DNA from: Octopus sinensis
Taxonomy: Eukaryota
DNA: 64,000 bases
Direction of reading: 5' to 3'
Assembly: GCF_006345805.1 (NCBI RefSeq)
Contig: NC_042999.1
Coordinates: 23,870,001-23,934,000 of the forward strand
The notes beneath the pieces were generated by a model, which saw nothing but the letters and a program-made list of their open reading frames with translations, did no database searches and had not been told where the DNA came from. Both the position numbers and the translations under genes were made by a program. Shown here piece after piece: positions 521-46,496 of this stretch. The first letter of the stretch is position 1. The number at the start of each line of letters is the position of its first letter.

Positions 521-557
<37 letters not shown>

Positions 558-998: not shown

Positions 999-1082
<84 letters not shown>

Positions 1083-3072: not shown

Positions 3073-3306
3073 GTACGATGGATTTTGTTCGAGTTATTAA
3101 AGCATATATTAAAGGAATCCCGATGTTATCTTATGTTTCAAACGATATAAAACAATGCAGTTCTAAATGCCTTGAAATTGACGAATGCAAGTCTTTTAAC
3201 TACGATACTAAATTTCATATTTGTGAATTGTTCACAATCAACGCTGCTTCGAGTACTGTCTTAACATCGAGAGGATGCTACCACAAGGTTTATTATCAAC
3301 GTGTCC
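3073..3306 (+). CDS. Paralog on plus strand: PAN/apple domain 1 exon (GTMDFVRVIKAY...QCSSKCLEIDECKSFNYDTKFHICELF...GCYHKVYYQRV)
   Basis: Acceptor tacatttcag|, donor |gtaag; 234 bp, phase 1 to 1; canonical PAN C-x3-C-x5-C-x-x-F-x-Y...C. Confidence 0.85.
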
Positions 3307-4177
3307 GTAAGTATACTTCATAAATATAACTAAATAAATTTCTATTCGTTGAATAATACATTGTTGTTGTTGTCGTCGTCGTCGTCGTCGTCTTCGTCCT
3401 CCATATTTCTCTTCCTTCACCCACTCCTCCCCTTCATCGCTCATGAATATATATGCATTTGTGTGTATATATATGTTGTTAGAAGGCGGCGAGCTGGCAG
3501 AAACGTTAGCACGCCGGGCGAAATGCGTAGCCGTATTTCGTCTGCCGTTACGTTCTGAGTTCAAATTCCGCCGAAGTTGACTTTGCCTTTCATCCTTTCG
3601 GGGTCGATAAATTAAGTACCCGTTACGCACTGGGGTCGATGGAATCGACTTAATCAGTTTATCTGTCCTTGTTTGTCCCCTCTGTGTTTAACCCCTTGTG
3701 GGTAGTAAAGAAATATATATATATGTTGTTTGTTCCTCTTCGAGCCACGCCTGGCTCATAAGGGTTCACTCCCTGCTTGCAATATATATCAAATGCAGAC
3801 TGTATCGAATGACCAGCTGGAGAAGGCGTCCTCCTGAGGTTAAAATAGCTGTGATTTCGGTCCCTACGGAACAGCCATATTTAAGTGGTGATAAACGTTA
3901 ATTCTCAGTATTATTTCTGCTGTCATCTCTTATAGAGATTTTCTGAACTTGCTAATTTGCTTGTTAATCCTCCTCTATTTTCTTTTACCCAAAGTCGGGA
4001 ACTTTTCTGTACCCATTGTCATCTTCTACATCATCACATTCCAGAATTATCTAAATTCATGCTATTGTTCCACTCAAGCAATTTTTCGTTGTTGTGTTTC
4101 TGTACATGAAATTGAATTTAGTATGCGATTGAAGTAACCAACTGAATAATATCTTTTCAATTTCATTCATTTTAAAG

Positions 4178-4393
4178 TGTCAAAAAATACCTCGATAAAT
4201 GGAGCTTCAATTATTGACTGCCATACTTTAGAAGTGAGCGAAGGAATATCTACAATAAAATTATGTGAAGCGAAGTGTTTACTGAAAAAGTGTTCAGCGT
4301 TTGACTATTCAAAACTTCAGAGAACATGTAGAATTATGCTTTCTACAAAAACAGAATTTCAACTTACAGGAGACGAGAAGAAGACGTTTGTTG
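4178..4393 (+). CDS. Paralog on plus strand: PAN/apple domain 2 exon (LSKNTSINGASIIDC...LCEAKCLLKKCSAFDY...TCRIM...TFV)
   Basis: Acceptor ttcattttaaag|, donor |gtaagg; 216 bp, phase 1 to 1. Read-through to the TGA at 4417-4419 is possible, but the donor position matches the minus-strand paralog exactly. Confidence 0.85.
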
Positions 4394-4656
4394 GTAAGGC
4401 ACGCATAACAAATTTTTGAAAACTATTTAAATATTCTCTCTGCTTGTGTTATTATGAATTTGTTTAACTTATTACATAATTTACAACAAATGTATTATGG
4501 GTGTTTGGTTGAGAAGTTCTCTTTGTATGCAAATGGTTCCGGATTCAGTCCATCTCCATGGACTCTTGGGCAAGTGTCTTCTATGATACTACAACGCCAG
4601 GCTGACCAATGTCTTGTGAGTGAATTTGGTAAATAGAAACTGCGTGGAAACCCGTC

Positions 4657-4724
<68 letters not shown>

Positions 4725-5619
4725 GTATGAATGTATGTTTATGTGTGTGTCTGTGTCTGTTTCTGCGTTTGTCTCCGCCAATGCTTGACAACCATTGTTA
4801 GTTGTCTACGGTCCTGCAACCTAGTGGTTCGTCCAAATGTGGCCGACAGACTAAGTAGACCGAAGGAAAATCATTGAAGCACGATAAAAGTTAAAGAATA
4901 TTCACAAGATATTTTTAATATCAAACGATAAAGAAAATCCTTTCTGCCTGCATTGTTGCTATTACAATGAAAGAAGTCAAACTGTTACATCGCATCATGT
5001 CGTGGTTTACTTAAGCATCGTTCATGATGCTCAATTTTATCGAAAAATATTTGATACATTGCCAGAAAGCGTGGAAAAGTTGCATTACTCCAATTCAATC
5101 ATTCATTTATTCATGCTGGGGCCAGTATTACTCGTGAGTGAGAAGTCCATTCTCTGTCTATCTCTAGCCAAGCCTTGACCATGCAAGCCGAAAGAGACGT
5201 GTGAAATTGATGCACCATCTCATCTCTGATCAGTCGTGAGATTTAGGCCATTGTCTTGGTGTCCATTCAGTGGCTTGGATCATCAATCTACTGTCCTTAA
5301 ATCATGCAAAGTAACTAATGATGAAATCATCGATTCCTCTCTGCTATCAGGTCTAAATACTTCTATTCCGATCGCGCGGAGGGATGCCGAGCATTCGACC
5401 GAGCTTGCGACCACGTGTAACTCCAAAATGGTGATGTTTAATATACGCATCTGACTACACGGGCTTGCTATAGTCGTTGACTATCTTAGTTCTGATCCAA
5501 CACTCTAATTAGACCAATATATGAATTAATTCCATCGACAAATCTAAGCGCTCTTTTACGTTCAAATAACGTTCTACTAGTTCGATTCTCTATTTCGCTA
5601 AAATATATTCTCTTTGTTT

Positions 5620-5853
5620 AAGGCGGCGAGCTGGCAGAAACGTTAGCACGCTGGGCGAAATGCGTAGCCGTATTTCGTCTGCCGTTACGTTCTGGGTTCA
5701 AATTCCATCGAGGTCGACTTTGCCTTTCATCCTTTCGGGGTCGATAAATTAAGTACCAGTTACGCACTGGGGTCGATGTAGTCGACTTAATCCGTTTTAT
5801 CTCTCCTTGTTTGTCCCCCTGTGTGTCTAGCCCCTTGTGGGTAGTAAAGAAAT
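5620..5853 (+). mobile_element. SINE family B (aggcggcgagctggcagaa...ttctgagttcaaattcc...); copies near 3483-3712(+), 22938-23465(+, tandem), 28626-28995(+, tandem), 47040-47587(-), 50381-50615(-), 55308-55540(-) plus many decayed ones
   Basis: Repeated consensus with tRNA-like head; this copy has a 17-bp TSD atatattctctttgttt (5603-5619 / 5854-5870). Confidence 0.85.
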
Positions 5854-5875
5854 ATATATTCTCTTTGTTTTTCAG

Positions 5876-5889
5876 CCATTACATATTAA
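5876..5889 (+). CDS. Probable terminal coding exon of the plus-strand paralog (AITY*)
   Basis: Strong acceptor ttctctttgtttttcag|cc, phase 1, TAA at 5887-5889, AATAAA motifs near 5941 and 5990. Confidence 0.45.
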
Positions 5890-6216
5890 GAAAAAACGCC
5901 GTTGCTTTCGGAGAAAATGTTCCTGTCACTATTTCTTATGAATAAAAAAAAAAAAGGATATGTGGAAAACATTTGAAGTAAACGCACTTAATAAATAAAT
6001 AAATAGATAGAATTAAAATTACTATAAATGTAATGCTTTTCTCTAGCATTTTCATTTAGATATTTGAAAGTATCAATAATGAATAAAGATGTTAACTATG
6101 CATATACTGAGTAGTTTTGTATTCACTATTTGTAAGAAACCTATAATCAGAAAACAAATGTGGTACTCAGTACTATATAGAACATGGCCACCACACCTGT
6201 TCTCTGTTTATTATTA

Positions 6217-6268
<52 letters not shown>

Positions 6269-6269
6269 T

Positions 6270-6824
6270 GAGTGAGAGAGCAGTGCATGCCGTCAAAGTG
6301 ACACTGGGGTAAAATATACAAAGCGCAGTGTACCCATCATGACTACCCGTCTGATAAGGGTACGCCAGGCACATGCATCACAACCAAATGTGCACGACAT
6401 GGTGATCTCATATCAAGATAAACATTGCATGACCTTGCTGGTGGGGCTCAGTTAGAATTTTCTTCTGGTCGAGTAGCTCATCCCGCTCAAAAGGTCCCTG
6501 AATAAGGATTGTTTAAGGATGTTGAACGAAACACCCTTGTTTCCAAAGGTGAATTATCCAAACCACCAAGATTTCCTTTCAACACATGGCTATGATGCTC
6601 CCCAACTACACCTGCCTGTGATCAGAGATGCACATATCGTCAGTCACTAAGGGACATGCTCAACTGGTTAAAGTCAAACAACTGACAAGCAAATCTGTGG
6701 TATTGAGAAGAATATTTGCTGTAGCCCATCTTTTATACCAAGACAAAACAATGTACATGATAACACTTCCAATCAGTAAAGATCAGAAGCCATGAGAGCC
6801 ACTGTCTGATACTGCATCAGGGCA
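6270..6824 (-). mobile_element. (AAT)n-embedded non-autonomous retroelement, near full length; other copies at 6933-7193(-), 31363-31888(+), 36171-36588(+), 44767-45288(+), 53934-54016(+)
   Basis: All copies share the 3' end gc(t)ctctcactc followed by (AAT)n and differ at their 5' ends; five of six sit between (AAT)n tracts. Confidence 0.8.
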
Positions 6825-6850
6825 TTTATGATTATTATTATTATTATTAC

Positions 6851-6932
<82 letters not shown>

Positions 6933-7192
6933 GAGTGAGAGAGCAGTTCATGCCATCAAAGTGACACGGGTAAAATATACGAAGCCCAATATACCCAACA
7001 TGACTACCCGTCTGATAAGGGTACACCAGGCACATGCATCACAACCATATGTGCGCGACATGGTGATCTCATATCAAGATAAACAGCGCATGACCTTGCA
7101 GGTGGGGCCCAGTTAAAATTTTCTTCAGGTTGAGTAGCCCATCCCGCTCAAAAGGTCCCTGAATAAGGATTGTTTAAGGATGTTGAAAGAAC

Positions 7193-7246
<54 letters not shown>

Positions 7247-7254
7247 TATTATTA

Positions 7255-7293
<39 letters not shown>

Positions 7294-7413
7294 CGCACAC
7301 TAGGCTATCTCAGGGATAACGCGTAGCGTTATTCTATACCGTATACTGGAATGGAGAGTGAGAACTACTACTGAACCCAATTTTTTATTGTTTCGCACCT
7401 TACTGGTCCCCTT

Positions 7414-7451
<38 letters not shown>

Positions 7452-7923
7452 TGTGCGTGCGTGTGCGTATATATGCATATATGTATGTATATATATATAT
7501 ATTTATATGTTTATATATATGTTATATATGTTTATATATATGTTATATAATATGTATGTGGAGGCGCAATGGCCCAGTGGTTAGGTCAGTGGTCACGTGG
7601 TCTTAGGTTCACGGTTTCGATTCCCAGACCGGGACTTGTGAGTGTTTATTGAGCGAAAACATCTAAAGCTCTACGAGGCTCCGTCAGGGGTGGTGGTGAA
7701 CCCTGCTGTTCTCTTTCATCACAACTTTCTCTCACTCTTTCTTCCTGTTTCAAAGGGCCAGCCTTTTCACACTCTGTGTCACACTGAATCTCCCCGAGAA
7801 CTACGTTAAGTGTACACGTGTCTGTAGAGTGCTGAGCCACTTGTATGTTAATATCACGAGCAGGCTGTTCCGTTGATCGGATCAACTGGAACACTCGTCG
7901 TCGTAACCTACGAAGTGCCAACA

Positions 7924-8006
<83 letters not shown>

Positions 8007-8365
8007 ATATATATAAAGTAGATAAATGGTACAACAAGGCAACAATATTTACTGGAAAATAGCAATCGATATAAATACGACGCTATTGTATAGCTTCACT
8101 GCGTATATACTAGCAAAGACGTGTGTGTGCAACAAACATGAAAAAAACATTGTCTTACCTCTAGGAAGAACATTTGATAAATAGACAACTTAGAATCGGA
8201 TAATGCACCGGTCTCTAACTCTTCGAAAAAGTTTGACAACGTAAATTTGATTAGTCTTCATCAGCTGCATTTACCTAGACAAAATTTCAAATGTTGCTAC
8301 ATCAATGCCAGTACACTCGTCTGAATGCTAAAACTTTAACAGAACGAGAACATACTGGACGAGCT

Positions 8366-8509
8366 AGAATTCATGACTCACTTATTAGTTATATTTCTTA
8401 ATATGCTTATTTTATTGTTATTTCGTAGTTGTTGTATTGTTTAAACTTATTATTTGATTCCTTAATATGCATATTAATAAATATAATTAACAAGTGAGTC
8501 ATGAATTCT
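8366..8509. mobile_element. Small MITE-like element with perfect 18-bp TIRs
   Basis: agaattcatgactcactt ... aagtgagtcatgaattct around an AT-rich core. Confidence 0.55.
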
Positions 8510-9034
8510 GGCCCACACTGTATATATGTATAGTAATGATAACAATAATCCAACGATGGAATTTCACAAATATTTTAAAGCATCGCTACGCGCGTTTCCA
8601 CAAATCATATGTTGTTTGTGACCATAATCCGCATACCTAGGATGATTACAATGTGATTTGTAATATCCATGAATATTATGACATGCTGTTATTCATGCGT
8701 TCATATCCTCAAGCGGAAGCTGGCATAATAACATAAAAGCTTTTAAATGCGTACTCACGAATGTTTCTCGTAAATGAACTTAAAGGGTATATATCTCGCC
8801 TGAAGATGGAGGCAGTGTTACTCGATAATTGATCCAAGTAACTAACATTATTCCGGACCACCAAGCCCCCAGAAACAGCTGTTGGATTCCTAAAACACTA
8901 CCCATTTAACCCCTGGTATAATTCATATTCTGTAATTTGGACTATTTTTTATCCATACATATACATTTTTTTTATTAAATGTATTTAATATTCTGCATGA
9001 ATCGATTTGCATAACTTGTTTGTCATTACATTTA

Positions 9035-9109
<75 letters not shown>

Positions 9110-10451
9110 TCTCTTCAAAACGGTATGATTTCAAGGGAATTGGCTGCGACTTCGAGAGGGGCAGTCAACGGAGTAAAGGTACTTTTAACCTTTCACGCTT
9201 CTCGAAATAATTAAAAAATTATGTAATTAATTAATAATTAAAACATTAACTATCAGTTATTGACTGTTCTTATAGTGGTTTCTAATTTGCGCACAAGTCC
9301 AGTAGTTTCGAGGGAAAGTGTTATGCGAAACCATCGGCCCTAGTTCAGACCTAAACCTCATCTTATTGACTCCAGACGGATAAAAGGCGAAGCTTATCTC
9401 GGTAACATTTGAGGTAGGGACGTAAAGAACCGGAACTTCATGTTTTAATAATCTTTTCTTATCTTACGACAAGACCAGCAGTTTTTGAAAGTGTGTAGTC
9501 GACTACATCGATCCCAGCGCTCAACGGGTACCTTTTTTTATTAACCTCAAAAGAATGAAAGGTAAAGTAACCTCGGCAGTATTTGAACTCAGAATGTAGA
9601 GTCGGAAGAACTACCGCTAAGCATTTTGTCCGGCACTGTCACGATTCGGCCAGCTTACCGCCTTATTTCATATCTCAATGACATCTACAACTAAGGAGGA
9701 GAGCTGGTAGAATCGTTACAACGCGTGACAAAATCTTCAGCGGTATTTTGTCAGTTTATATGTTCTGAGTTCAAATTCTGCCGTGGTCAATTTGGATTTC
9801 ATCTTTGCGGAGTCGACAAAATAAGAAACATTTGAGCAATGGGGTTGATATAACCGACTAAACTTCTCTCCCGAAATCGCTGGCCTTCTGTTAAAATATA
9901 GAACTAATAATATTTACCTGAAGTATGTTTATACTCGTGGAGGCACATGGCCTCGTGGTTAGAGCAGCGGACTTGCGGTTGAGTGATCGCGGGTTCGAAT
10001 CTCTACCGGGCGATATGTTTGTTTATGAGCGAAACACCTAAGATCAACGCGGCTCCGGCAGAAGGTAATGGCGAACTTCTGCTGACTCTTTCGCCACAAC
10101 TTTCTCTCACTCTTTCCTCCTGCATCTTGCGTCCTGTCCAGGTGGGGAACCTATACGCCAAGGAAACCGGGAAACCGGCCCTTATGAGCCAGGCGTGGCT
10201 CGAGAAGCAACTAACAACATTGTTCATACTGAAGATTAAATTCTTAATTTTTTTTTAAAAGAGAAAGATAAAGGAAATAATAGGTGTTAATCTTATGGTA
10301 GTTGGTATTTTCTTAAGAAATCTTTCACTATTAACAACACAATCAAATTTATCAAATAAGCAAAAATCAAAAGACACTCATGCTGAAATATATTTATTTT
10401 CAATATAACGTGAATGTGTTTATAAAATACTAACACTATATATTATATATA

Positions 10452-10505
<54 letters not shown>

Positions 10506-10509
<4 letters not shown>

Positions 10510-10825
10510 GAAATGAAGAAAACGCTGACAAAATAATTTAAGTAAAGGAGAGTGTATTTAATTAGGTGAAAGTTCTTTTTACCGGTTGCGCATTTGTTAT
10601 GCTTATCAAAAGATATTTTTTAAAGAGAGATAGAGTTCATTTCTGATAGATTTTTTTCTCTTATCTGATAAGAGAAAAAAAATCTATCAGAAAGGAACTC
10701 TATCTCTCTTAAAAAAATATCTTTTGATAAGCATAACAAATGCGCAACCGGTAAAAAGAACTTTCACCTAATTAAATACACTCCCCTTTACTTAATTATT
10801 TTGTCAGCATTTTCTTCATTCCTTT
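10506..10825. repeat. Near-perfect palindrome of about 320 bp centred on 10666
   Basis: Centre ctcttatc-t-gataagag; arms complementary for about 160 bp with a handful of mismatches. Confidence 0.92.
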
Positions 10826-10863
10826 TTTTATATATCACAACTCGTGTTCCACATCTCCTTTTT

Positions 10864-10943
<80 letters not shown>

Positions 10944-11709
10944 ATGTATGTATGTGTGTGTGCATAAGCATATATATCTGTATAGGGAGACAGATATGTA
11001 CCTGTGTGACTGTGCATGCATGTACACCCGAGAGGTTTAATTATCCTGTATAATATACACACCGACATGCACATGTGCAGTTAAATGCGTACCTATCTCT
11101 CAGTAGTTCTGACTATATTTTAAGCGTGTTTTTGTGTTTAATTGAACTAAAAAGAAAAAAGAAAATGAGAACAAAATTCGCAATTGGCGATCCATGGTCA
11201 GGTAGAGATAGACAGGTTATACTGGAAAGGAACCTAAAAGTAAAAATAGAGTACGTTGATTAGATGACCAAAAACTAAAGATATTTATATTCATGATTAA
11301 AAAGGATAATTCTTAATAAATGCAAAATAGATAAAATTTATAATGAAATTCATAAAACCATCTCTCTTTCTCTCTCTCTCATACACACACACACACACGC
11401 ACACACACACACATACTTTGTACAATAGGCACAAGACCTAAGGCCGGGACTTCGTAGGGAGGGTGCAACTCTGTTACATCTACCCCAATGTTCAACTGGT
11501 TCGTAAGTCATCGACCCCGAATGTCAAGCACGGTGAAATTTGAACTCAGGACATAAAGATGGACGAGATACAACTAAGCATTTTCCTCGTCGTGCTAATA
11601 ATTCTGTTAGGCACTTTTCTCATAGTCCACATTCCTACAATTTCGTCTTTTAGTAGTCGGTAGTTATCAATTTCCTCTATAGTTATTATACAGGGTGTCC
11701 ACAAGGTCT

Positions 11710-12063
11710 GGGTACATGGAGTAAATAAAATCATAACATAAAGAATTAAACATAAGAAATAATAATTTCTTAAAGTATGTGTTAATCCCCATGTGGGTAC
11801 ATGGAGTAAATAAAATCCTAACATAAAGAGTTAGATATAAGAAATAATAATTTCTTAAAGTATGTGTTAATCCCCATGTGGGTACATGGAGTAAATAAAA
11901 TCATAACATAAAGAATTGAATATAAGAAATAATAATTTCTTAAAGTATGTGTTAATCCCCATGTGGGTACATGGAGTAAATAAAATCATAACATAAAGAA
12001 TTGAATATAAGAAATAATAATTTCTTAAAGTATGTGTTAATCCCCATGTGGGTACATGGAGTA
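11710..12063. repeat. 85-bp minisatellite, 4 units plus 14 bp
   Basis: gggtacatggagtaa recurs at 11710, 11795, 11880, 11965 and 12050. Confidence 0.95.
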
Positions 12064-12425
12064 AGTGAGGGCGCGTCGCTTCGTGGTTAGGGCATTCGGC
12101 TCATGATCGTAAGGTTGTGAGTTCGATTCCCGGCGACGCGTTGTGTCCTTGAGCAAGACACTTTATTTCACGTTGCTCCAGTCCACTCAGCTGGCAAAAA
12201 TGAGTTGTACTTGTATTTCAAAGGGTCAGCCTTGTCACTCTCTGTGTCACGCTGATTATCTCCGAGAACTACGTTAAGGATACACGTGTCGGTGGAATGC
12301 TCAGCCATTTGCACGTTAATTTCACGAGCAAGCTGTTCAGTTGATCGTATCAGCTGGGACCCTCGTCGTCGTAACCGGCGGAGTCTTTCTACACAATCAT
12401 ACAAACTCAGATATCTATCTATCTG

Positions 12426-12458
<33 letters not shown>

Positions 12459-12463
12459 TTATC

Positions 12464-12494
<31 letters not shown>

Positions 12495-12711
12495 CTATCC
12501 ATCTATCTATCTCTCTCCCTCTATCAATCTATATATATATATCACACACACCTATATATATATATATGTATGTATATATATATATTATATATATATATAT
12601 GTATGTATTTATATATATATAAAATATATATATATTATATATATTATATATGTATATATATGTATATTATATATATATATATATAGATATAAATATATAT
12701 ATAATATGTAT

Positions 12712-12777
<66 letters not shown>

Positions 12778-12925
12778 TGTCTTTACTCTCTTTTTACTCT
12801 TTTACTTGTTTCAGTCATTTGACTGTGGCCATGCTGGAACACCGCCTTTAGTCAAGCAAATCGACCCCGGGATATATTCTTTGTAAGCCTAGTACTTATT
12901 CTATCGGTCTCTTTTGCCGAATCGC

Positions 12926-12962
<37 letters not shown>

Positions 12963-13063
12963 TTATATATATATATATATAAATATAAATATATATATAT
13001 GTAATATATATATATATATATATATAATATATATATATATATGTATAATATATATAAATATAA

Positions 13064-13113
<50 letters not shown>

Positions 13114-13146
13114 ATATATATATATAATGTATATATATATATATGT

Positions 13147-13226
<80 letters not shown>

Positions 13227-13728
13227 TGTCTTACTCTCTTTTTACTCTTTTACTTGTTTCAGTCATTTGACTGTGGCCATGCTGGAACACCGCCTTTAGT
13301 CAAGCAAATCGACCCCAGGACTTATTCTTTGTAAGCCTAGTACTTATTCTATCGGTCTCTTTTGCCGAATCGCTAAATTACGGGGACGTAAACACACTAG
13401 CATCGGTTGTCAAGCGATGTTGGGGGGGGGGGGGGGCAAACATAGACACACAATCATATACACACACACATACATATATATATATATACACATATATACG
13501 ACGGGCTTCTGTCAGATTCCGTATACCAATTCCACTCATAAGGCTCTGGTCGGCCCGCGGCTATAGTAGAAAACACTTTCCCAAGGTGCCACGCAATAGG
13601 ACTGAATCCGGAACCATGTGGTTGGTAAGCAAGCTACTTACCACACAGCCACACATATTAAACTATAAAAGATTATTGCATTACTGGTCTTTGTATCATA
13701 CAAGTATAAGTGTAGATTTTTATTTACT

Positions 13729-13757
13729 TCACCCTCCTACAGAATTTTTGGTCTTGG
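13729..13757 (-). CDS. Probable terminal coding exon of the VWD/PAN gene (AKTKNSVGG*)
   Basis: Acceptor gtttctacttttag|cc in phase 1, TGA at 13731-13729, AATAAA at 13724-13719; the paralog's candidate last exon also starts ag|cca. Short, so an alternative acceptor (e.g. near 13890) cannot be excluded. Confidence 0.5.
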
Positions 13758-15108
13758 CTAAAAGTAGAAACCATTTGTGGTTATAAGGGAATCAGATCGA
13801 TCAAGTGCTTGTAATATTGTGAATTCGAAAGTAATCGTTTGTGTTATAGCTTTACTGTATTTGTGAAGGAGGACACTTCATTAAATTCTTTTGATACAGA
13901 AGAACACCATATATATGAAGGGAAAAGACAAATAGTTGAATCAACCCGAAAATATCTGTAAGACGTCAGGTCTACCCGCCAGGGTTCTCTATGTATCTGT
14001 AACTGGAATGATCTTTTCTAAGGTACAAGACCGAGAAGATCGGGAAAGCTTTGTTTCTATGGAAGACAACCGATTGCATATCTTATAGGTCTTCCTTCTC
14101 TGCACCATGAACGTTTGTCCGAAAGTAAGACTAAGATTGATATATTTTGGTGCCAGCGTCATCGAGCATGAATTCAGAACGTAAAAAGATGGAAAAATTT
14201 CGCACGGTATTTTGACTAAAGATCTAATACGTGGTGAATATTCTTACGTGCTTTAGTCACGTTGCAGCCACACTGGTGTACAGCCTTCAAAGGTTTAATC
14301 GAACATAACGACCCTAATAGTTAATTGTTTTTTAAAGTCTTATACTTATAGGCACAGGAGTGGCTGTGTGCTAAGTGCCTTGTTTACCAACCACATGGTT
14401 CCGGGTTCAGTTCCACTGCGTGGCACCTTGGGCAAGTGTCTTCTACTATAGCCTCGGGCTGACCAAAGCCTTGTGAGTGGATTTGGTAGATGGAAACTGA
14501 AAGAAGCCCGTCGTATATATGTATATGTATATATGCATGTGTGTGTTTGTATGTCTGTGTTTGTCCCCTAGCATTGCTTGACGACCGATGCTGTTGTGTT
14601 TATTCCCCCGTAACTTAGCGGTTCGGCAAAAGAGACTGATGGAATAAGTACTGGGTTTACAAAGAATAAGTCCCGGGGTCGATTTGCTCGACTAAAGGCG
14701 GTGCTCCAGCATGGCTGCAGTCAAATGACTGAAACAAGTAAATGAGTAAAAGAGTAAAGAGTTATGCCATCAGTCTCTTATGCCGAATCGCTAAGTTACA
14801 AGGACGTAAACACAGCAACACCGATTGTCAAGCAGATTGGGGGACAAACACAGAATAAAGACATACCCGCACACACAACCACATCTCACAGACACACACA
14901 TACACACTCACGACGAACTGCCACACATTTTTCACACACCAAATTTACTCATGAAGCAATGATCAGTCTAGAGTGATTGTAGCAGACACACGGCCATGGT
15001 GCTGCGCAAAATCAAATGGTTACAAAGCAAGCTTCTTAACCTCACTGCCATTTATACGCATGCTCATTAACAAAATGTAAAGTTGTACAGGAAACACAAA
15101 ATACATAC

Positions 15109-15324
15109 CAGCAAAATAACTATCCTTGTTAGTAATGAACCGTAAGTATCTGTTGTAAGTCATCACCATTTTGCATACTTTCTTTGACTTAAGAAACGTT
15201 GCTCCGAAGCATCCTTTTTGCAAGCACATCTCTTGACAGTCTTCTTTATTCTTTACGTTAGTAATTGTCTGAAGATCATCGCAGTTTTCAATTGAAGCAC
15301 CATTTATTACGAAATTGCGTTTAC
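15109..15324 (-). CDS. VWD/PAN gene exon: PAN/apple domain 2 (SKRNFVINGASIENC...DCQEMCLQKGCFGATF...VCKMV...SYFA)
   Basis: Acceptor ttttcactgaaag|, donor |gtatgt; 216 bp, phase 1 to 1; same length as plus-strand exon 4178-4393, with shared INGASI and all five Cys aligned. Confidence 0.85.
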
Positions 15325-15783
15325 CTTTCAGTGAAAATCAAGAAATGTATAATGTTATGTGTATTCCTTTTAAATTCTTATCAACACATATAAGACATGT
15401 CAAGAAATACGTGTATACACACACACACACATACAAACACACACACACTCGCACACTCATACACATATACATACATATATATGCATATATATATTAATCT
15501 TTGTTTTTATGGTCAGTTATAAGCAATTTTACATTAATATGATCGGTTACTCTAAACGCTTGTAGAGTACGAATCTATTATTGTTATACAAGAATGTTGT
15601 TGATAGCGAATTCGAGTTTCGGACAGCTATATATATATAAATTTATGTAATAAACTGCTACTGTTATGGACATCACTATATAGGACAGACGAGTATGACA
15701 CTGGGACGGAGAACCACTCTATATAATGAGCAAATCCAATTCCCGCAATAAAAATAGATTCTTCTAAGTGAACACAGAGAGAG

Positions 15784-15835
<52 letters not shown>

Positions 15836-16689
15836 TGCCGGTAACATCAAACAAAATTTCACAGTTTTCCCCTTCTACCCGTGCAAAGACACAATTTCGT
15901 TACAAGAACTTTTAAATAAAGAAAATCTATTCATCGAAAAATACAGAACACGTCTAAATATGTATGCATAACCATCTCTATACATATTTTCATTCGTGAC
16001 TACATACCCATCGCTGTACATATTCTCCCCCCCCCCGCTTACCGAAAGATAAACAATTATCTCCCCCGTCCACAATAATAATGATAACCAATTACTTCTC
16101 CTTAGAGTTTTCTACTTGTTGAATCATTCATTCATAAATTCCACACACAAGGACAAAATTTTTTTCTTTAGAAAATACGTACTTAAATAAATTTTTCTCT
16201 CCACTCGGTCTAAAAAATGTTTGCTGTAACTTGGTTGATAGAAGTTATTAGTATTAGTATTGTTATTAATTATATCAGTATTATTATTCTTATGATTTAT
16301 TATATTGGGATTGCTAGGAGGTTGCTGTTGGTGTCTGGGTAAACTGGTTGGAAATACGTGGTTCGGGTTTCTTCGTTGGAATAAATTGTTTGGGTGCTTA
16401 ATTATGTTTGGGATGTTGAGGACTTGGTTGTGTTGTCTGAGTAAATAGGTTGAGAGTCCGTAGGTTGAATTTCTTCGTTGAGGGATAGAGGAAGTCTCTT
16501 GGACGTTTCTAGTTGCTGGGGAGAAAAAAATCACTCCTAACCCTAGGGTTTGACCCAGTATTTCTTATTAGTGAAAGGTGTATGAAGCCTTGTCCAGGAG
16601 GAACTGATGTCATCAAACGGTATCTAGCATTCATCGGGTGTTTCGACCCTGAACCGTAACACCCTCCCATTGGTGGGTCAGTAGAAGTG

Positions 16690-18235
16690 GCTAGGTCACT
16701 GTTCCTCATCTCCTCATGGTTTCCAGCTTAACTCTTCTCCCTTACTCCAAAGCCAACAAGAACCTCTTTCAGCTGCCTCTCCCTCCTGCACACTGCCACC
16801 CCTCGCTTCTTACCTCTGATTACAATTGTTGTAAGTATCCACCATGCCTACTAAGCTGGGAATCCCCTGCAGCCAGCTTCGTCTAGAAAAAGCCATACTT
16901 GCCGTCCCTTCTTCCTGCAATCCTGCAGAAGGCTCTCATATCTGGCACGCTTCCGTTCATGGGCCTTATCACAGCCCTCTCCCACGATAATTTTCTTGGC
17001 CTTTTCAGACCACAGGACCACATCTTGCCTCAGGGTTGTATGGACAACCTGGGGAAACTGCAATCTCTCCCCAAGTCCACTTTCATATCCTATAGTTGAG
17101 ATCCTTGCAGCAGGCTATGTATTGTTTTTGGTGACTCTACTAGTCTCTCTCCCTCTTTCACAAACTTAATTGCTGCTGTTACCTTCGCTTGGTGATGATG
17201 CTTCTTGCACTTTTCCTGCTCCAGGGTGTGAGCAATTGTTGCAAGAACCCTATCATGGCACCATTTAAATTTACCTTGAGAAATTGCTATTCTGCACCCT
17301 GCCAAGATGTGTGCCCGTTGCTCCACAAAGGGGTCCTTCCCCAAACCCCCATCTGTGCAGGTTTGCTGGCGTCGGGGGAGTGTCACACCGCCCGCAGCAG
17401 GAAGGCGATGCGTAAGAGTTTAGCTTTCACAGGTCAGTCTACGTGATCTCCTCTAAGGGAAATTTTATCTAGTCCATGCACCCTGAGATACCAACCCCAC
17501 ACCTCTTGGTTTTCTTCTTTCTTCCTCCTGGTACCGCACCGCTTCCTTGGTCATAGCCCGCCTCTCCCTGTTGTCTGCTTTCTTCCATTGTCGAAAATAG
17601 GAAGAACCAAGACCCTAGAAACCCATGTCTGTAACTCCAATGATGTCGCATAGCAGCAGCATCCCTTCAGCCTGAGCGACTGCGGCGCTAGCAGCCTACT
17701 TTCGCCAAGACCTTACCTGCTTGTCTTACAAACTCGTCCTTAGAATCTCTCTACATCATTACAACTTTACATTTTGTTACTTTAAATTCCTCCACTGCGG
17801 ATGACAGGGGAAGTTGTAGCTGTCTCTATCGTATGTACAGGTCTATTGAAGTGAAGCTTGGAGTTACACCTAGCCATCTTCGGAGGTATTTATTTATATT
17901 CCTCTCCACCCTTTCCACACTTGTTATCGGAACATTATACAGTATCAGCAACCATATGGGTCTTGGGAGCTGTCCATGTTGGTAGAGCCATGCCTTGAAC
18001 TTTCCTGGAAGCTCTGATCTATCAATCCTCATCAGCCACTCTTCTGCTTGCTTCACAATGTTGGTGACATTGCTTCTGTCTGACAGCGACTTGTCCAACA
18101 TCTTTCCAAGGCATTCAATAGGATTTTCCTCTATTGATGAAATGGCCTCTCCTTACACTTTCAGCCTGATTTTGTAGGTTAATTTCGCCCATCCCTGATC
18201 ACCACGCACCTCGATGTTTTTGGTTTAAACCTCAT
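16690..18235 (-). mobile_element. Degenerate restriction-like-endonuclease non-LTR retrotransposon (HERO/NeSL-like), 3' portion with frameshifts
   Basis: Fragments LPGKFKAWLYQHG..., LRRWLG, HILAGC.IA.SQGKFKWCHDRVL, and RQDVVLWS...CDKAHERKRARY...EAGCRGFP. Confidence 0.8.
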
Positions 18236-18327
18236 TCATGCCCATGTCGCCATGTGTTCTTTCTGCATCCACAATATATATATATATATATATGTATATA
18301 CAATATACATGTGTTCTTTCTGCATAT

Positions 18328-18379
<52 letters not shown>

Positions 18380-18934
18380 ATATATATGTATATATATATA
18401 TAACATATATATATACACTCTCAAAGGGACACACTGTCCCCTGTTATAAACCACATTAGGGGAGTTAAATAATATTGTAAGGCGGTAAAATTTTGGAAAT
18501 CGTATTTCTTTTGTACCTAGTAGTCATGTTTTATTTTCTTTGAAATCGGGAGTATTTGAAATTTCACAGGAGGTGAAATAAGACTTTCGTCTTATAGATG
18601 TGCAGATACACAGACTTTGAGCTTTATTATATAGAAGATATTTTTCATGCAATTTACGCATACTTGCACGCGTGGTGGACACAGTTCACGTCAAACAGCT
18701 GACTGAGTAAAGTTTACTATTCAATGCATGGGATAAGGCCTAAACAAACACATTATCGATTTTTGCACTTGCGAGATGAATTTCGGAACAGAAATAGCGC
18801 AGTTCAATTTTCATTCACCTAAACTTTAAGTGACCCATTTTTGGTGGTTCTACGATTTGTTGGCTAGGAGGAGATGTGGCGGGAAGTTAAATACACAGAC
18901 TCATACACAGACACACACACAGACACACAAGTTG

Positions 18935-18978
<44 letters not shown>

Positions 18979-19569
18979 TGTTCCTTCTCGAGCCACGCCT
19001 GGCACATAGGGCCGGTTTCTCGGTTTTATTGGCGTATAGATTCCTCACATGGACGGGACGCCGGTCCGTCGCAGGTGAGCTGCAAGACGCAGGAGGAAAG
19101 AGTGAGAGAAAGTTGTGGCGAAAGAGTCAGCAGAATTTCGCCATTACCTTCTACCGGAGCTTAGGTGTTTCGCTCATAAACACACACATCGCCCGGTCTG
19201 AGATTCGAACCCGCGATCCCTCGAACGCGAGTCCGCTGCTCTAACCACTAGGCCATGTGCCTCCACACACATACACACACACATGCATATATATGTATGT
19301 GTGTGTATATATTTGTGCGTCTGTGTTTGTCCCCCAGCATCGTCTGGCAACCGATGCTGGTGTGTTTACGAGCCCGTAACTCAGCGGTTCGGCAAAAGAC
19401 ACTGATACAATAAGTACTAGACTTACAAAGAATAAGTCCTGGGGTCGATTTGTTCGACTAAAGGCGGTGCTCCAGCATGGCCGCAATCAAATAAGTGAAA
19501 CAAGTAAAAATATATAAAATTTTAAAAAAATTTCTTTCAAATGTTTCAACTTCAAACGTGCGGTCATAC

Positions 19570-19792
19570 TGGGGCACCACCTTTGACTGTGCTACACCAT
19601 TATTTGAATCCTCCTCTGACATGTGGAATTTGGAAAATGATGGAGTTTGATGCCGCTACCCTCATCACTGTTTCCTGCTGTGAGTTAGGCTCGTCTGGAA
19701 CCTTTGACAGGAAGAGATCCAGTTTTGCTTTAAAGATACTTACATCTACACCATGCAGATCTCTCATTCATTTTTTGGAAGGATATTGAAGA
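19570..19792 (-). mobile_element. 3' fragment of a CR1/L2-like LINE
   Basis: LFNILPK / RDLHGVDVSIFKAKLDLFLSKVPDEP...SNS resembles the end of a CR1-group ORF2. Confidence 0.55.
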
Positions 19793-20487
19793 GTACGCAT
19801 ATACAAATATACCCATCTGTGTGTGTTCATGTGTGTATATATGTATATCAAAAATGACCAAAGGTCCCACCCAAGCCATCGGTTCATAAGTTCAGCTTCA
19901 GGAATCTGTAGTGTATGCATAATGCGGGTGTAGAATCCTAGAATAATGTTAAGTATTGTACATGGAAAAATACAGAACGAGCAGTAATTATGCTTGGAAA
20001 ATTACAGAACAAGAAGAAAAATTTTTTTCTAAATATTATTGTCCCCTGAATAGCTGTGAAACCAGCTTAGAATATTGGTTGAGCACCCTTAGAAAATGAA
20101 ACAGAAGTCGAAAAAAGCAAAAAAACAAATAAAAATGCGACTAGCACGTCGCTATAAAGGATCGAACAGCCTTCTGCAGTATTAAGTTAAATGATCCCTG
20201 AGATCAGATATCGTCTTTCATAAGGCTAAATATCTTAAAATTGGGTGTGTGTCGCTAGCCGGAAACTGGCAACTGTGTTATCTCTTTATCATACGGTTTC
20301 AGCATCGTGAGATGAGTCGGCACAGCTCGCCAGTTCTCGAACAACCACGCTACGAGCATATATGTTTGTTCCATAAAGATTTATGGATGATTTAGCGAAT
20401 CGCTAATGTGTATACCAATAATTAAATTAAGCAGTTAGTTAGCAGAGTTTCACCAAAAAGGAAAACAATAAATATATATATACTTAC

Positions 20488-20718
20488 TGATTTTCTGAGT
20501 ATAGAATTTTGACTGGCAGTCGGCAGAGGTCAAAGTAAAATTGCCACTCGCATCAACATTATATATGTCACATATTTTACGAGCATCATCGTAGTTATAT
20601 GCCTTGCAATATTTATTATTCCAAAAGATGTGAAAGCATTGGTTATGATCCACTGAATATGAAGCCCAAGCAATGGCGTTCAATTCTGCTTTATATACTC
20701 TAATATAATGCCATCGAC
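20488..20718 (-). CDS. VWD/PAN gene exon: PAN/apple domain 1 (GRWHYIRVYKAEL...QCFHIFWNNKYCKAYNY...ICDIY...DCQSKFYTQKI)
   Basis: Acceptor ttttcttcgcag|, donor |gtaag; 231 bp, phase 1 to 1; C..YNY......C PAN motif; aligns with plus-strand exon 3073-3306. Confidence 0.82.
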
Positions 20719-23556: not shown

Positions 23557-23734
23557 CAAGGCGGTAGCGACAGTCTGATCCATAATATCCATTGTTACAG
23601 AAACATTGTCGTCTACCATTTTTAAGACTACATTTACCAGTCTCTGAACAAGAATATGAATTTTTCCTGTATTTGCCAGTTGCTGCACAATAGTATGTGT
23701 TATTACAAGTAGAATCAACGAGACTTGAATATTT
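23557..23734 (-). CDS. VWD/PAN gene exon: Cys-rich plus EGF-like segment (KYSSLVDSTCNNTYYC...CSETGKC...QCFCNNGYYGSDCRYRL)
   Basis: Hand-translated. Acceptor ttcattcatag|, donor |gtagg; 178 bp, phase 0 to 1; CxCxxGYYGxxC EGF end. Confidence 0.88.
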
Positions 23735-25264: not shown

Positions 25265-25455
25265 CTTAATGTATACATCATTAATGGAACAACCACAGCC
25301 ATCGTTTTTACGAGCGCAAGTTTTTCCGCTGTAATAGAGATTCGGTCCGCAAGTACAGCCTTCAGAGAACGTTGAACATTCTGTGGTGTTCAAACAATCG
25401 TTTCGGCAGCTTGTGGCATAGTACTTGTAGCTTTCGTAATATGAACAGAGTTTTG
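25265..25455 (-). CDS. VWD/PAN gene exon: second TIL domain (PKLCSYYESY...SCRNDC...EGCTCGPNLYYSGKTC...GCGCSINDVYIK)
   Basis: Acceptor ctaatccttcag|, donor |gtaatt; 191 bp, phase 1 to 0, identical in length to the first TIL exon. Confidence 0.88.
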
Positions 25456-26918: not shown

Positions 26919-27187
26919 GACATCTTGCAACTCCTCTCCAGTTTATTGGTACTCCAGCTCTTTCACACTCAGTAACAAAAGCTTCAATACTTTTACAAAA
27001 TAAAATCTCGGTATTCACACTGTCGGTGGATGAGCAGACATCTGATTGACAAGATTCAAAAAACCGATTGGCTAGTTCTTGGCCAAGCGTTTGTACACAC
27101 GATGTGAAAATACTACTGTGTATGATATTACATCGTTGCATTTCAGTACTGTTGCATTTTATGTTAACAACACTTGTTGCATTACAC
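26919..27187 (-). CDS. VWD/PAN gene exon: second C8 domain (...FFESCQSDVC...FCKSIEAFVTECERAGVPINWRGVARC)
   Basis: C8 pattern; acceptor ttgtatttctag|, donor |gtgag; 269 bp, phase 2 to 1. Confidence 0.9.
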
Positions 27188-29035: not shown

Positions 29036-29334
29036 TCTTCGTTAGAATCGCCAGCGACCTGATAACTATTTGCAATTAAACTGTCTTTGTCTGTTAGAGA
29101 TGAAACGTCTCGTCCAGCCTTTGTACGTAAGTCATCTTGTTTTCCATTGCAGTCACCGCAGATACCAGTTAGTTTGTTAGCAAACGAGATTGGAAGGCTC
29201 ACAGTAACTCTCTGATTTCCATCATACTTCACTGTTAATCCCCATTCGGTCTTAACTGTTATCCAACCGACAGCATAATATGCTTCAAATTCCTCGAATT
29301 TCACGACAGGGAGAGTGTATTCTTCTTCATTAAC
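29036..29334 (-). CDS. VWD/PAN gene exon: VWD domain, C-terminal half (...GLTVKYDGNQRVTVSLP...LTGICGDCNGKQDDL...)
   Basis: GICGDCNG VWD signature; acceptor atatttcag|, donor |gtaag; 299 bp, phase 0 to 2. Confidence 0.92.
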
Positions 29335-32450: not shown

Positions 32451-32695
32451 CAAAATTCTGTTTAATGGTAACAAATTAATTGTGATCGAATTTATTTTGA
32501 TGTCTACTGCGCGTTTAGGGGTGTGGTATGGTTCCATAATACTTCGACGTTCGCTCTTCACATCAACAGAAAACACTGTGCTCCCTGATTGTCCAGATAC
32601 GATATTATACGTGCAGTCTCCCTTGAAACTTATCGCTTGTCCATCAAACGTTCGATAATAAAACTCTCCATAATTGTAGCAGGAACACTCTTTCT
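32451..32695 (-). CDS. VWD/PAN gene exon: VWD domain, N-terminal half (EKECSCYNYGEFYYRTFDGQAISFKGDCTYNIV...)
   Basis: TFDG..F.G.C.Y VWD signature; acceptor tttcttttcaag|, donor |gtaag; 245 bp, phase 1 to 0. Confidence 0.9.
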
Positions 32696-35613: not shown

Positions 35614-35730
35614 CTTGAGCACAAAATCGGCCAAAATAATTCTCAGTACATTCACAAATGAAGGTGGAATCTTTGTTGATACATTCTCCTCCATTCTTGC
35701 ATGGATTTGTTTCATTGTTGCAGGGATCAA
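35614..35730 (-). CDS. VWD/PAN gene exon: EGF domain (VDPCNNETNPCKNGGECINKDSTFICECTENYFGRFCAQ)
   Basis: Hand-translated (the ORF track shows another frame). Six-Cys EGF with PCKNGGEC; acceptor attattcag|, donor |gtaag; 117 bp, phase 1 to 1. Confidence 0.92.
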
Positions 35731-46312: not shown

Positions 46313-46496
46313 CGAATTTCTCGCATTTGCCATTTTGCAGTATATAGCCTGGATTGCAGTAACACGCTTGCTTGTTTTGGGATATCGTACACTGGCTGTT
46401 ATCTGGACAACCATTTATTTCCTTATGTGTTAGATGTCCTGTACCATTACATGTTGATATACTGTTACAGTTTGGTCCATACCTTTCTTCATTAAT
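46313..46496 (-). CDS. VWD/PAN gene exon: Cys-rich (TILa-like) plus EGF-like segment (INEERYGPNCNSISTC...CPDNSQC...QACYCNPGYILQNGKCEKF)
   Basis: Hand-translated. Acceptor aatttccag|, donor |gtaat; 184 bp, phase 0 to 1; CxCxxGY...C EGF-type end. Confidence 0.85.

What the first reader, a model, noticed from the sequence alone, without database searches (positions are those of the whole stretch)
3073..20718. Tail-to-tail pair of strongly diverged paralogs sharing the PAN-PAN C-terminus
Seen: plus exons 3073-3306 and 4178-4393 mirror minus exons 20718-20488 and 15324-15109 in order, phase and length (234 vs 231; 216 vs 216). PAN2 aligns without gaps, yet only 17 of 72 residues are identical (INGASI, the five Cys and a few others). 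The putative stops are about 7.8 kb apart. Inference: an inverted tandem duplicate family whose binding heads diverged while exon geometry stayed fixed, as seen in recognition proteins under diversifying selection. More members may flank the window.
Basis: partly seen in the sequence, partly recalled or inferred. Interest (0 to 1): 0.72.

Follow-up and report, generated by a model that had tools for sequence, protein, structure and literature searches.

The report
Fast-evolving octopus PAN-tailed adhesion gene pair
Two neighbouring Octopus sinensis genes that face each other tail to tail both end in a pair of PAN/Apple binding domains, and in one of them those domains and a VWA domain change about twice as fast as neutral DNA between octopus species, which marks it as a candidate recognition protein.

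Summary
All four exons have AG/GT borders at the stated coordinates, are phase 1-1 and encode PAN/Apple domains. P1 matches M1 (27/78) and P2 matches M2 (18/73, no gaps) far better than the cross pairs.

The window is Octopus sinensis chromosome CM016861.1. The minus gene (M) is XP_029633305.1, "zonadhesin-like": C8-TIL-EGF-VWA-EGF-VWD-C8-TIL-EGF-PAN-PAN plus a 17-nt last coding exon. The plus gene (P) is annotated with a 656-aa product carrying EGF, VWD, TIL and PAN_1. The stop codons are 5.3 kb apart, not 7.8 kb.

P and M are not sister duplicates. They are two of at least seven old paralog lineages, seen only in octopods among named sources.

Diversifying selection is supported for M only. 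Against the syntenic O. bimaculoides ortholog, dN/dS is 3.6 for PAN1, 1.5 for PAN2 and 2.8 for VWA, versus 0.5 for the VWD/C8/TIL core. The PAN1 and VWA exons are twice as diverged as their own introns. O. vulgaris repeats the PAN1 and VWA result.

P's PAN2 and the PAN pairs of other paralogs are conserved (87-91% identity). Function is inferred, and no expression data were available.

The parts
3073..3306 (+). P gene PAN1 exon (234 nt, phase 1-1)
   Evidence: AG/GT borders and open frame. Pfam PAN_1 3.5e-10.
4178..4393 (+). P gene PAN2 exon (216 nt, phase 1-1)
   Evidence: The O. bimaculoides ortholog is 94.4% nt and 62/71 aa identical with the same splice sites.
5876..5889 (+). P gene last coding exon (CC ATT ACA TAT TAA, giving ...FV-A-I-T-Y-stop)
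   Evidence: The annotated gene end maps to 5889. The sequence is identical in O. bimaculoides.
11217..11233 (-). M gene last coding exon (GT TCC TTT CCA GTA TAA, giving ...AG-SFPV-stop)
   Evidence: The joined exons translate exactly to XP_029633305.1.
15109..15324 (-). M gene PAN2 exon (216 nt, phase 1-1)
   Evidence: dN/dS is 1.0-2.6 against O. bimaculoides.
20488..20718 (-). M gene PAN1 exon (231 nt, phase 1-1), the fastest-evolving exon
   Evidence: dN/dS 3.6 (3.4 when O. vulgaris is used). Exon divergence 0.214 against 0.100 for the flanking intron.
23557..23734 (-). M EGF-like exon
25265..25455 (-). M TIL-2 exon (TIL-like; no Pfam hit when scanned alone)
   Evidence: It aligns with the TIL domains of the paralogs.
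26919..27187 (-). M C8-2 exon
   Evidence: Pfam C8 2.3e-12. Exon borders.
29036..29334 (-). M VWD exon b
   Evidence: Pfam VWD. Exon borders.
32451..32695 (-). M VWD exon a
   Evidence: Pfam VWD. Exon borders.
35614..35730 (-). M EGF exon
   Evidence: Pfam EGF 7.8e-8. Exon borders.
40247..40810 (-). M VWA exon (metal-site motif DxSxS not kept); dN/dS 2.5-3.4
46313..46496 (-). M EGF-like exon
48551..48741 (-). M TIL-1 exon
   Evidence: Pfam TIL 1.2e-8. Exon borders.
51322..51587 (-). M C8-1 exon
   Evidence: Pfam C8 3e-13. Exon borders.
53663..53715 (-). Annotated first coding exon of M; doubtful, because the model is cut short at its 5' end
   Evidence: The VWD-1 exons present in O. vulgaris and O. 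bimaculoides are missing from the window next to the N gap.

Best explanation
The window holds the 3' ends of two convergently transcribed members of a gene family whose PAN-PAN tail was found only in octopods among named sources. The family encodes secreted, cysteine-rich mosaic proteins. The full layout, seen in paralog P0067, is signal peptide, VWA, an EGF array, VWD, C8, TIL, EGF, then two PAN/Apple domains and a tail of 2-4 residues (longer in one paralog lineage) encoded by its own tiny exon.

Shown: the two genes are old paralogs, not a recent inverted duplicate. Their PAN exons keep the same order, phase and near-identical length, as in other family members.

Shown: the minus-strand gene M (XP_029633305.1, "zonadhesin-like") keeps its VWD/C8/TIL scaffold under purifying selection. 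Its VWA and PAN1 modules collect amino-acid replacements about twice as fast as neutral sites, and PAN2 is elevated. The plus-strand neighbour P and the other paralogs do not show this.

Inferred, by analogy with von Willebrand factor, mucins and zonadhesin: the VWD-C8-TIL unit builds disulfide-linked multimers. The VWA and tandem PAN modules bind a protein or glycan partner that itself changes quickly, either a gamete surface or a pathogen or parasite surface.
For: - Identity and gene models: the joined window exons translate exactly to XP_029633305.1. Names and sources come, the locus and neighbouring genes, and domains from Pfam.
- PAN fold: the AlphaFold2 model of M's PAN-PAN has mean pLDDT 90.3 and pTM 0.83. 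Its best PDB matches are factor XI and prekallikrein apple domains, AMA1, TgMIC4 apple 1-2 and the lectin SML-2, all at probability 1.0.
- Family: the PAN-PAN profile search gave 9 hits at or below about 1e-22. All named ones are from Octopus or Argonauta, and the full-length ones place PAN-PAN 2-4 residues from the C-terminus. The shared architecture is visible in the family alignment.
- Synteny: the tail-to-tail pair is present in O. bimaculoides, and introns align at about 90% identity.
- Selection, O. sinensis against O. bimaculoides (NG86): PAN1 3.58, PAN2 1.47, VWA 2.76, core 0.52. LWL85, YN00 and ML give 2.2-5.0 for PAN1+2 and 2.8-3.4 for VWA. Fisher tests of dN>dS give p=0.021 for PAN and 0.0007 for VWA.
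- Against neutral DNA: the replacement-site difference fraction is 0.197 for PAN and 0.228 for VWA, against 0.0955 over 5,174 intron nt (p=2e-8 and 5e-15). Exon against its own flanking intron: PAN1 0.214 vs 0.100, VWA 0.227 vs 0.099.
- Replication with the independent O. vulgaris assembly: PAN1 3.44, VWA 2.52.
- Sister species O. sinensis and O. vulgaris: 36 nt and 29 aa differences in PAN1+PAN2+VWA (1,011 nt), against 13 nt differences in the other nine exons (1,940 nt). The 1 kb of intron next to PAN1 has 7 differences.
- Not a pseudogene: 983 codons are open, all 24 splice sites are kept, and all exon indels are multiples of 3. A neutral simulation expects about 15 stop codons, and 0 of 2,000 runs had none.
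Against: - No expression, proteomic or binding data were available, so secretion, multimer formation and the partner are all inferred.
- The selection test rests on three closely related species and pairwise methods. The PAN2 signal is weak (dN/dS 1.0-2.6, and the exon is not clearly faster than its short flanks).
- Replacements in M also hit family-conserved columns: 10 of 37, with no significant bias toward variable sites (p=0.15). The VWA metal-site motif is lost, so relaxed constraint contributes.
- M's 5' end is unresolved in this assembly (N gap at 55208-55307), and no signal peptide is seen in its model.
- The P gene's upstream exons lie outside the window. Its architecture is known only from a precomputed annotation line.
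Confidence: 0.72

Rival explanations
1. The two genes are simply old paralogs. The low identity between the P and M PAN domains reflects age and ordinary drift, with no special selection on the binding domains.
For: P is closer to other paralogs (mostly 35-39%) than to M (29-31%). All paralog pairs fall at 25-49%, apart from one closer pair at 61%. P's PAN2 is 87% conserved with dN/dS about 0.8-1 and is more conserved than its intron. Other paralogs' PAN pairs are 89-91% conserved between the same species.
Against: This does not explain M. dN/dS is 2-5 in PAN1+2 and 2.5-3.4 in VWA. Exon divergence is twice that of the flanking introns. Replacements are in excess even between O. sinensis and O. 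vulgaris.
Confidence: 0.17
2. The minus gene is a decaying, non-functional copy, and its fast change is loss of constraint.
For: The annotated model lacks a signal peptide and its first VWD. The VWA metal-site motif is lost. O. sinensis has Phe at a family-invariant Cys of PAN1. 10 of 37 conserved columns changed. A Pfam scan of the full-length protein no longer reports PAN_1.
Against: Loss of constraint gives dN/dS near 1 and divergence equal to introns, not twice as high. The frame is open over 983 codons in three species, all splice sites are kept and indels are in-frame. A neutral simulation expects about 15 stops. Core exons have dN/dS 0.2-0.5. The missing 5' part sits beside an assembly gap and is present in O. 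vulgaris. The Cys is intact in O. vulgaris.
Confidence: 0.06
3. The apparent acceleration is an artefact of assembly error, a comparison of non-orthologous copies, or gene conversion from paralogs.
For: Both the O. sinensis and O. bimaculoides assemblies contain gaps in this locus. The family has many paralogs.
Against: Flanking introns are collinear at about 90% identity. dS in the fast exons (0.07-0.14) matches intron divergence, which excludes paralog mixing or conversion. The independent O. vulgaris assembly gives the same values for PAN1 and VWA.
Confidence: 0.03

Closest known systems
Mammalian zonadhesin (ZAN)
   Same: Has VWD-C8-TIL units with EGF. It evolves by intense positive selection and mediates species-specific sperm-egg adhesion (PMC9275260). 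NCBI names the minus gene "zonadhesin-like".
   Different: No MAM domains, mucin region or membrane anchor were found here. The octopus proteins add VWA and a C-terminal tandem PAN, and the selected modules are VWA and PAN rather than VWD. Zan arose within vertebrates (PMC9275260), so the likeness is one of kind, not orthology.
IgGFc-binding protein, alpha-tectorin, gel-forming mucins and von Willebrand factor (proteins with VWD-C8-TIL "D assemblies")
   Same: These were the best non-cephalopod sequence matches to the family profile. They share the VWD-C8-TIL unit, and VWF also has VWA domains.
   Different: Only 22-28% identical to M over 32-54% of its length. None of those hits carries PAN_1 in its precomputed Pfam list. 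No VWC, CTCK or ZP domain was found in the octopus proteins.
Tandem PAN/Apple binding modules: factor XI and prekallikrein apple domains, Toxoplasma MIC4 apple 1-2, Sarcocystis lectin SML-2, Plasmodium AMA1
   Same: Same fold by Foldseek (probability 1.0, E 4e-6 to 1e-3). From established knowledge, all are ligand-binding modules for proteins or galactose.
   Different: Sequence identity is only 9-17%. The two-domain TM-score is about 0.38 with rmsd of 9.5 Å or more, which fits a different domain packing. The protein context differs, and no ligand is known for the octopus proteins.

Membership tests
PAN/Apple domain (Pfam PF00024) | Sequence match above the Pfam gathering score | tested here: met
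   P1 40.0 bits, P2 27.3 bits and M2 25.7 bits, all above 21.4. M1 alone scores 19.3 bits (below), while the M tandem scores 34.7 bits. A scan of full-length XP_029633305.1 does not list PAN_1.
PAN/Apple domain (Pfam PF00024) | Alpha/beta PAN fold | tested here: met
   The AlphaFold2 model has pLDDT 90.3, with one helix packed on a sheet in each half. The top PDB matches are apple/PAN proteins.
PAN/Apple domain (Pfam PF00024) | Conserved cysteine framework | tested here: met
   Five Cys per domain are aligned across the family. The one exception is that O. sinensis M has Phe at the second Cys of PAN1, while O. vulgaris and O. bimaculoides keep Cys.
VWD-C8-TIL mosaic proteins | VWD, C8 and TIL domains in that order | tested here: met
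   For M, shown by Pfam on the exons and on the full protein. For P, known only from the precomputed record of its 656-aa product, which lists EGF, VWD, TIL and PAN_1.
Zonadhesin proper | MAM domains and a mucin-like region at the N-terminus | tested here: not met
   No MAM hit in P0001, P0069, P0067 or P0068.
Zonadhesin proper | C-terminal transmembrane anchor | tested here: not met
   Most family proteins end 2-4 residues after PAN2, and one paralog lineage has a tail of about 17 residues. No hydrophobic tail is seen.
Zonadhesin proper | Sperm acrosomal expression and egg-coat binding | not testable with these tools
   No expression data were available. The O. maya "zonadhesin" qPCR primers (PMC6522055) do not match this locus.
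von Willebrand factor | VWC repeats and a C-terminal cystine knot | tested here: not met
   No VWC or CTCK hits.
Inverted tandem duplicate pair (sister paralogs) | The two copies are each other's closest relatives | tested here: not met
   P to M is 29-31% identical, while P to other paralogs is mostly 35-39%. The neighbour-joining tree has no P+M clade, though deep nodes are weak (25-46% bootstrap).
Recognition proteins under diversifying selection | dN/dS above 1 in the binding modules and below 1 in the scaffold | tested here: met
   Met for M: PAN1 3.4-3.6, VWA 2.5-3.4, core 0.5-0.7. Not met for P: PAN2 is about 0.8-1 and the exon is more conserved than its intron.

The most novel reading that the evidence does not exclude
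The minus-strand gene is an octopus recognition protein in an arms race. The leading candidate is a gamete or sperm-storage adhesion factor that works like mammalian zonadhesin and contributes to reproductive isolation between Octopus species. The alternative is a mucosal decoy or opsonin against parasites that themselves use PAN adhesins. In either case the VWA and PAN1 modules would be the specificity-determining surfaces.
Probability: 0.3. Interest if true: 0.8.

Novelty: new variant of a known kind. Interest (0 to 1): 0.55.

Why it matters
Very few fast-evolving recognition genes are known in cephalopods, and I found no paper describing this family in five literature searches.

This case has a clear split. 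The scaffold is conserved, with dN/dS 0.2-0.5. The VWA and PAN1 modules change about twice as fast as neutral DNA, even between the sister species O. sinensis and O. vulgaris. That gives a specific candidate for gamete recognition or host-parasite interaction in octopus, and it names the two modules to test.

It also shows a limit of standard annotation. Pfam on the full-length protein misses the PAN tail of the fast-evolving copy. Two of the three species' gene models for M are cut short by assembly gaps.

Tried and rejected
- Word-indexed protein searches with the 150-aa PAN-PAN peptides found nothing, although XP_029633305.1 is in the collection. The exhaustive profile search found it.
- An ORF-against-ORF search for a shared last exon downstream of PAN2 found only SINE-like repeats. 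The real last coding exons are 14 and 17 nt and became visible only through the annotated protein.
- I considered reading through the PAN2 donor, which gives a hydrophobic tail in M, and rejected it. The donor sites are conserved in both genes and in O. bimaculoides. Four paralogs end 2-4 residues after PAN2. The O. bimaculoides read-through model is explained by an assembly gap over the last exon.
- The inverted DNA repeats between the two genes are dispersed SINE copies, not remains of the duplication.
- No upstream P-gene exon was found in 1-3072.
- The first VWD of M was sought in 53716-64000 and not found.
- The O. maya "zonadhesin" qPCR primers do not match the locus.
- Literature searches for this accession, for octopus Apple or PAN domains and for PAN+VWD in molluscs gave nothing specific.
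- Rfam found no RNA family in the window.
- Look-ups of P0067 and P0068 failed because only the longest isoform of a gene is on record. P0110's gene range was too long to return DNA or coordinates.
- The P PAN1 ortholog could not be compared, because it falls in an O. bimaculoides assembly gap.


Full report
**1. The observation**

The four stretches are real exons.
- Each is bounded by AG and GT exactly at the coordinates given and is open in the frame offset by two bases.
- All are symmetric phase 1-1. Lengths are 234 and 216 nt on the plus strand and 231 and 216 nt on the minus strand.
- Pfam assigns PAN_1 to P1 (3.5e-10), P2 (3.2e-6) and M2 (1e-5). M1 alone falls just below the cut-off (19.3 against 21.4 bits), but the M tandem passes at 34.7 bits.
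- The two PAN-PAN units align end to end with 46/151 identities (E=1e-24).
- P1 matches M1 at 27/78. P2 matches M2 at 18/73 without gaps. Cross pairs are much weaker. So a two-domain unit is shared, not just a domain type.

The one wrong detail is the distance between the stop codons (section 2).

**2. What the genes are**

An exhaustive profile search with the two PAN-PAN units returned a 1,006-aa protein that matches the minus-strand exons.
- It is XP_029633305.1, "zonadhesin-like", from Octopus sinensis.
- The encoding contig is chromosome CM016861.1. Window position x equals record position 23,870,000 + x.
- Joining 14 window exons reproduces that protein exactly.

The order of M's exons is:
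- a doubtful start exon (53715-53663);
- C8, TIL, EGF, VWA (one 564-nt exon), EGF;
- VWD (two exons), C8, TIL, EGF-like;
- PAN1, PAN2;
- a last coding exon of 17 nt (11233-11217) that adds SFPV and the stop codon.

The plus-strand gene is annotated too. Its product is 656 aa, with EGF, VWD, TIL and PAN_1 hits on record. Its coding end maps to 5889, which is the end of a 14-nt last exon (5876-5889, ending ...AITY-stop). So the plus gene does not have an unrelated N-terminus, as far as the annotation record shows. The stop codons are 5,328 bp apart, not about 7.8 kb.

**3. The family**

The strongest PAN-PAN relatives (E at or below about 1e-22) come only from Octopus and Argonauta among named sources. 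Two unnamed read-archive contigs are also among them.
- The full-length members share one layout. The most complete one, P0067, has a signal peptide, VWA, about 20 EGF repeats, VWD, C8, TIL, EGF, PAN and PAN, and ends two residues after the PAN pair.
- No member has a membrane anchor, MAM, VWC, CTCK or ZP domain.
- A model of M's PAN pair is confident (pLDDT 90.3, pTM 0.83). Its best matches in the PDB are all apple/PAN proteins: factor XI and prekallikrein, AMA1, TgMIC4 apple 1-2 and the lectin SML-2.
- PAN exon geometry is kept in four paralog lineages. PAN1 is 231, 234, 234 or 237 nt and PAN2 is 213-219 nt, always phase 1-1 (the borders of two paralogs were read by eye from the printed flanks).

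**4. Are P and M a duplicate pair?**

No.
- P's PAN pair is 39% identical to P0066, P0067 and P0094, and 35% to P0068, P0005 and the Argonauta protein. It is only 29-31% identical to M.
- A neighbour-joining tree shows at least seven lineages that predate the split of O. sinensis and O. bimaculoides. One of them also predates the split from Argonauta. There is no P+M clade, though deep nodes are weakly supported.
- The tail-to-tail arrangement itself is old: it is present in O. bimaculoides.
- Other relatives lie nearby. A VWA-EGF gene of the P0067 group sits about 76 kb to the right of the window. In O. vulgaris the D paralog lies about 205 kb from the M ortholog.
- One PAN-PAN gene is 61 Mb away on the same chromosome.
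- The immediate right-hand neighbour, with a 1,757-aa product, has no Pfam hit on record.

**5. Is there diversifying selection?**

This could be tested because the syntenic O. bimaculoides locus was retrievable (L002). All 12 M exons from C8-1 to PAN2 have orthologs there with AG/GT borders, and the frame is open over 983 codons.

NG86 dN/dS per exon:

| Exon | dN/dS |
|---|---|
| C8-1 | 0.41 |
| TIL-1 | 0.17 |
| EGF-a | 1.39 |
| VWA | 2.76 |
| EGF-b | 0.89 |
| VWD-a | 0.97 |
| VWD-b | 0.38 |
| C8-2 | 0.47 |
| TIL-2 | 0.51 |
| EGF-like | 0.98 |
| PAN1 | 3.58 |
| PAN2 | 1.47 |

Pooled values and tests:
- The core is 0.52 and PAN1+PAN2 is 2.23.
- Three other estimators give 2.2-5.0 for PAN1+2, 2.8-3.4 for VWA and 0.5-0.7 for the core.
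- Fisher tests of dN>dS give p=0.021 (PAN) and 0.0007 (VWA).

A second neutral yardstick is independent of codon models.
- Aligned non-exon DNA differs at 9.55% of 5,174 sites (K=0.10).
- Replacement sites in PAN differ at 19.7% (p=2e-8) and in VWA at 22.8% (p=5e-15).
- The PAN1 exon is twice as diverged as its own 2 kb of flanking intron (0.214 against 0.100). The same holds for VWA (0.227 against 0.099).
- C8-2 equals its flanks. PAN2 is not clearly above its short flanks.

The independent O. vulgaris assembly repeats the result for PAN1 and VWA: PAN1 3.44 and VWA 2.52, with PAN2 at 1.01.

The pattern is visible even between the sister species O. sinensis and O. vulgaris.
- PAN1, PAN2 and VWA carry 36 nucleotide and 29 amino-acid differences in 1,011 nt.
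- The other nine exons carry 13 nucleotide differences in 1,940 nt.
- The 1 kb of intron next to PAN1 carries 7 differences.
- By my own Poisson arithmetic, 8 differences in the 231-nt PAN1 exon at the intron rate has a probability of about 2e-4.

M is not a pseudogene. A neutral simulation at the intron rate expects about 15 stop codons, and none of 2,000 runs stayed open. All splice sites are kept, and all exon indels are multiples of three.

**6. What is not accelerated**

- P's PAN2 is 94.4% (nt) and 87% (aa) identical to its O. bimaculoides ortholog, with dN/dS about 0.8-1. It is more conserved than its intron, which is about 88% identical.
- P's PAN1 ortholog lies in an O. bimaculoides assembly gap, so it could not be compared.
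- Between the same species, the PAN pairs of two other paralogs are 91% and 89% identical, against 62% for M. In P0067/P0094 the PAN region is no faster than the rest of the protein.
- Among paralogs, PAN2 is the most diverged domain (20-35%). That reflects long-term divergence, not necessarily selection.

**7. Caveats**

- Replacements in M also hit conserved family columns: 10 of 37, with no significant preference for variable sites.
- The VWA metal-site motif DxSxS is absent from both M orthologs.
- O. sinensis shows Phe at an invariant PAN1 Cys, in the codon at 20624-20626. O. vulgaris keeps Cys, which points to a very recent change, a polymorphism or an assembly error.
- So some loss of constraint is mixed in, but it cannot produce rates above neutral.
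- The M model lacks its first VWD and a signal peptide. Both other species have that VWD, and the window has an N gap at 55208-55307.

**8. How it most likely works (inferred)**

By analogy with von Willebrand factor, mucins and zonadhesin, the conserved VWD-C8-TIL units would form disulfide-linked multimers. The EGF repeats would act as spacers. The VWA and tandem PAN modules would bind a partner. In M, VWA and PAN1 are the parts under positive selection, which fits a partner that changes quickly.

Octopus papers report transcripts labelled "zonadhesin" in the oviducal gland at fertilisation and in the white body (PMC8976471, PMC6522055). Their primers do not match this locus, so this is context only.

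**9. Verdict**

- The family assignment and the fixed exon geometry are right.
- "Inverted tandem duplicate" is not right.
- Diversifying selection is well supported for the minus gene only, and is centred on PAN1 and VWA.
- The gene models already exist in public annotation, but the family and its selection pattern appear undescribed.

Noticed in passing
window 55208-55307 and 53663-53715: A 100-N assembly gap lies upstream of the minus gene. The first VWD exons, present in O. vulgaris (P0075) and O. bimaculoides (P0069), cannot be found in the window. The annotated start exon is a short ORF with no signal peptide. So XP_029633305.1 is probably cut short at its 5' end.
   Followed up: partly
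window 20624-20626 (minus strand): O. sinensis reads TTT (Phe) where O. vulgaris reads TGT and every paralog has Cys, at the second Cys of PAN1. This is a very recent substitution, a polymorphism or an assembly error.
   Followed up: partly
window 37654-39099 (minus strand): A 482-codon open frame with a reverse-transcriptase domain (RVT_1, 3.4e-30) lies in the intron between the VWA and EGF exons. It is a retrotransposon insertion.
   Followed up: partly
window 62464-64000 (minus strand): The 3' end of another annotated gene lies here. Its product is 1,757 aa, on the same strand as M and upstream of it, with no Pfam hit on record. The stated end coordinate does not coincide with a stop codon, so it may include untranslated sequence.
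   Followed up: partly
window 837-1288, 12791-13661, 14360-14751, 19331-19518, 22743-23443 and elsewhere: Many dispersed copies of SINE-like repeats of about 130-206 nt occur in both orientations at 80-93% identity, together with long TA/CA-type microsatellites. They account for every DNA-level inverted repeat between the two genes.
   Followed up: partly
L002 73300-73875 and 78606-79313 (O. bimaculoides): Assembly gaps cover the orthologs of M's last exon and of P's PAN1 exon. This explains why the O. bimaculoides M model reads through the PAN2 donor, and why the neighbouring 769-aa model lacks PAN.
   Followed up: yes
XP_029633305.1 (P0001), whole protein: A Pfam scan of the full-length protein, and its precomputed domain list, do not report PAN_1. 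The excised C-terminus scores 34.7 bits and folds as two PAN domains. Routine annotation therefore misses the tail of the fast-evolving copy.
   Followed up: yes
P0002 and P0003 (Octopus sinensis and O. bimaculoides, other chromosomes): A separate octopus family of very long proteins is built from repeated PAN-PAN-Sushi-like units, with up to 16 PAN matches in 2,643 aa. It suggests a broader expansion of PAN domains in octopods.
   Followed up: no
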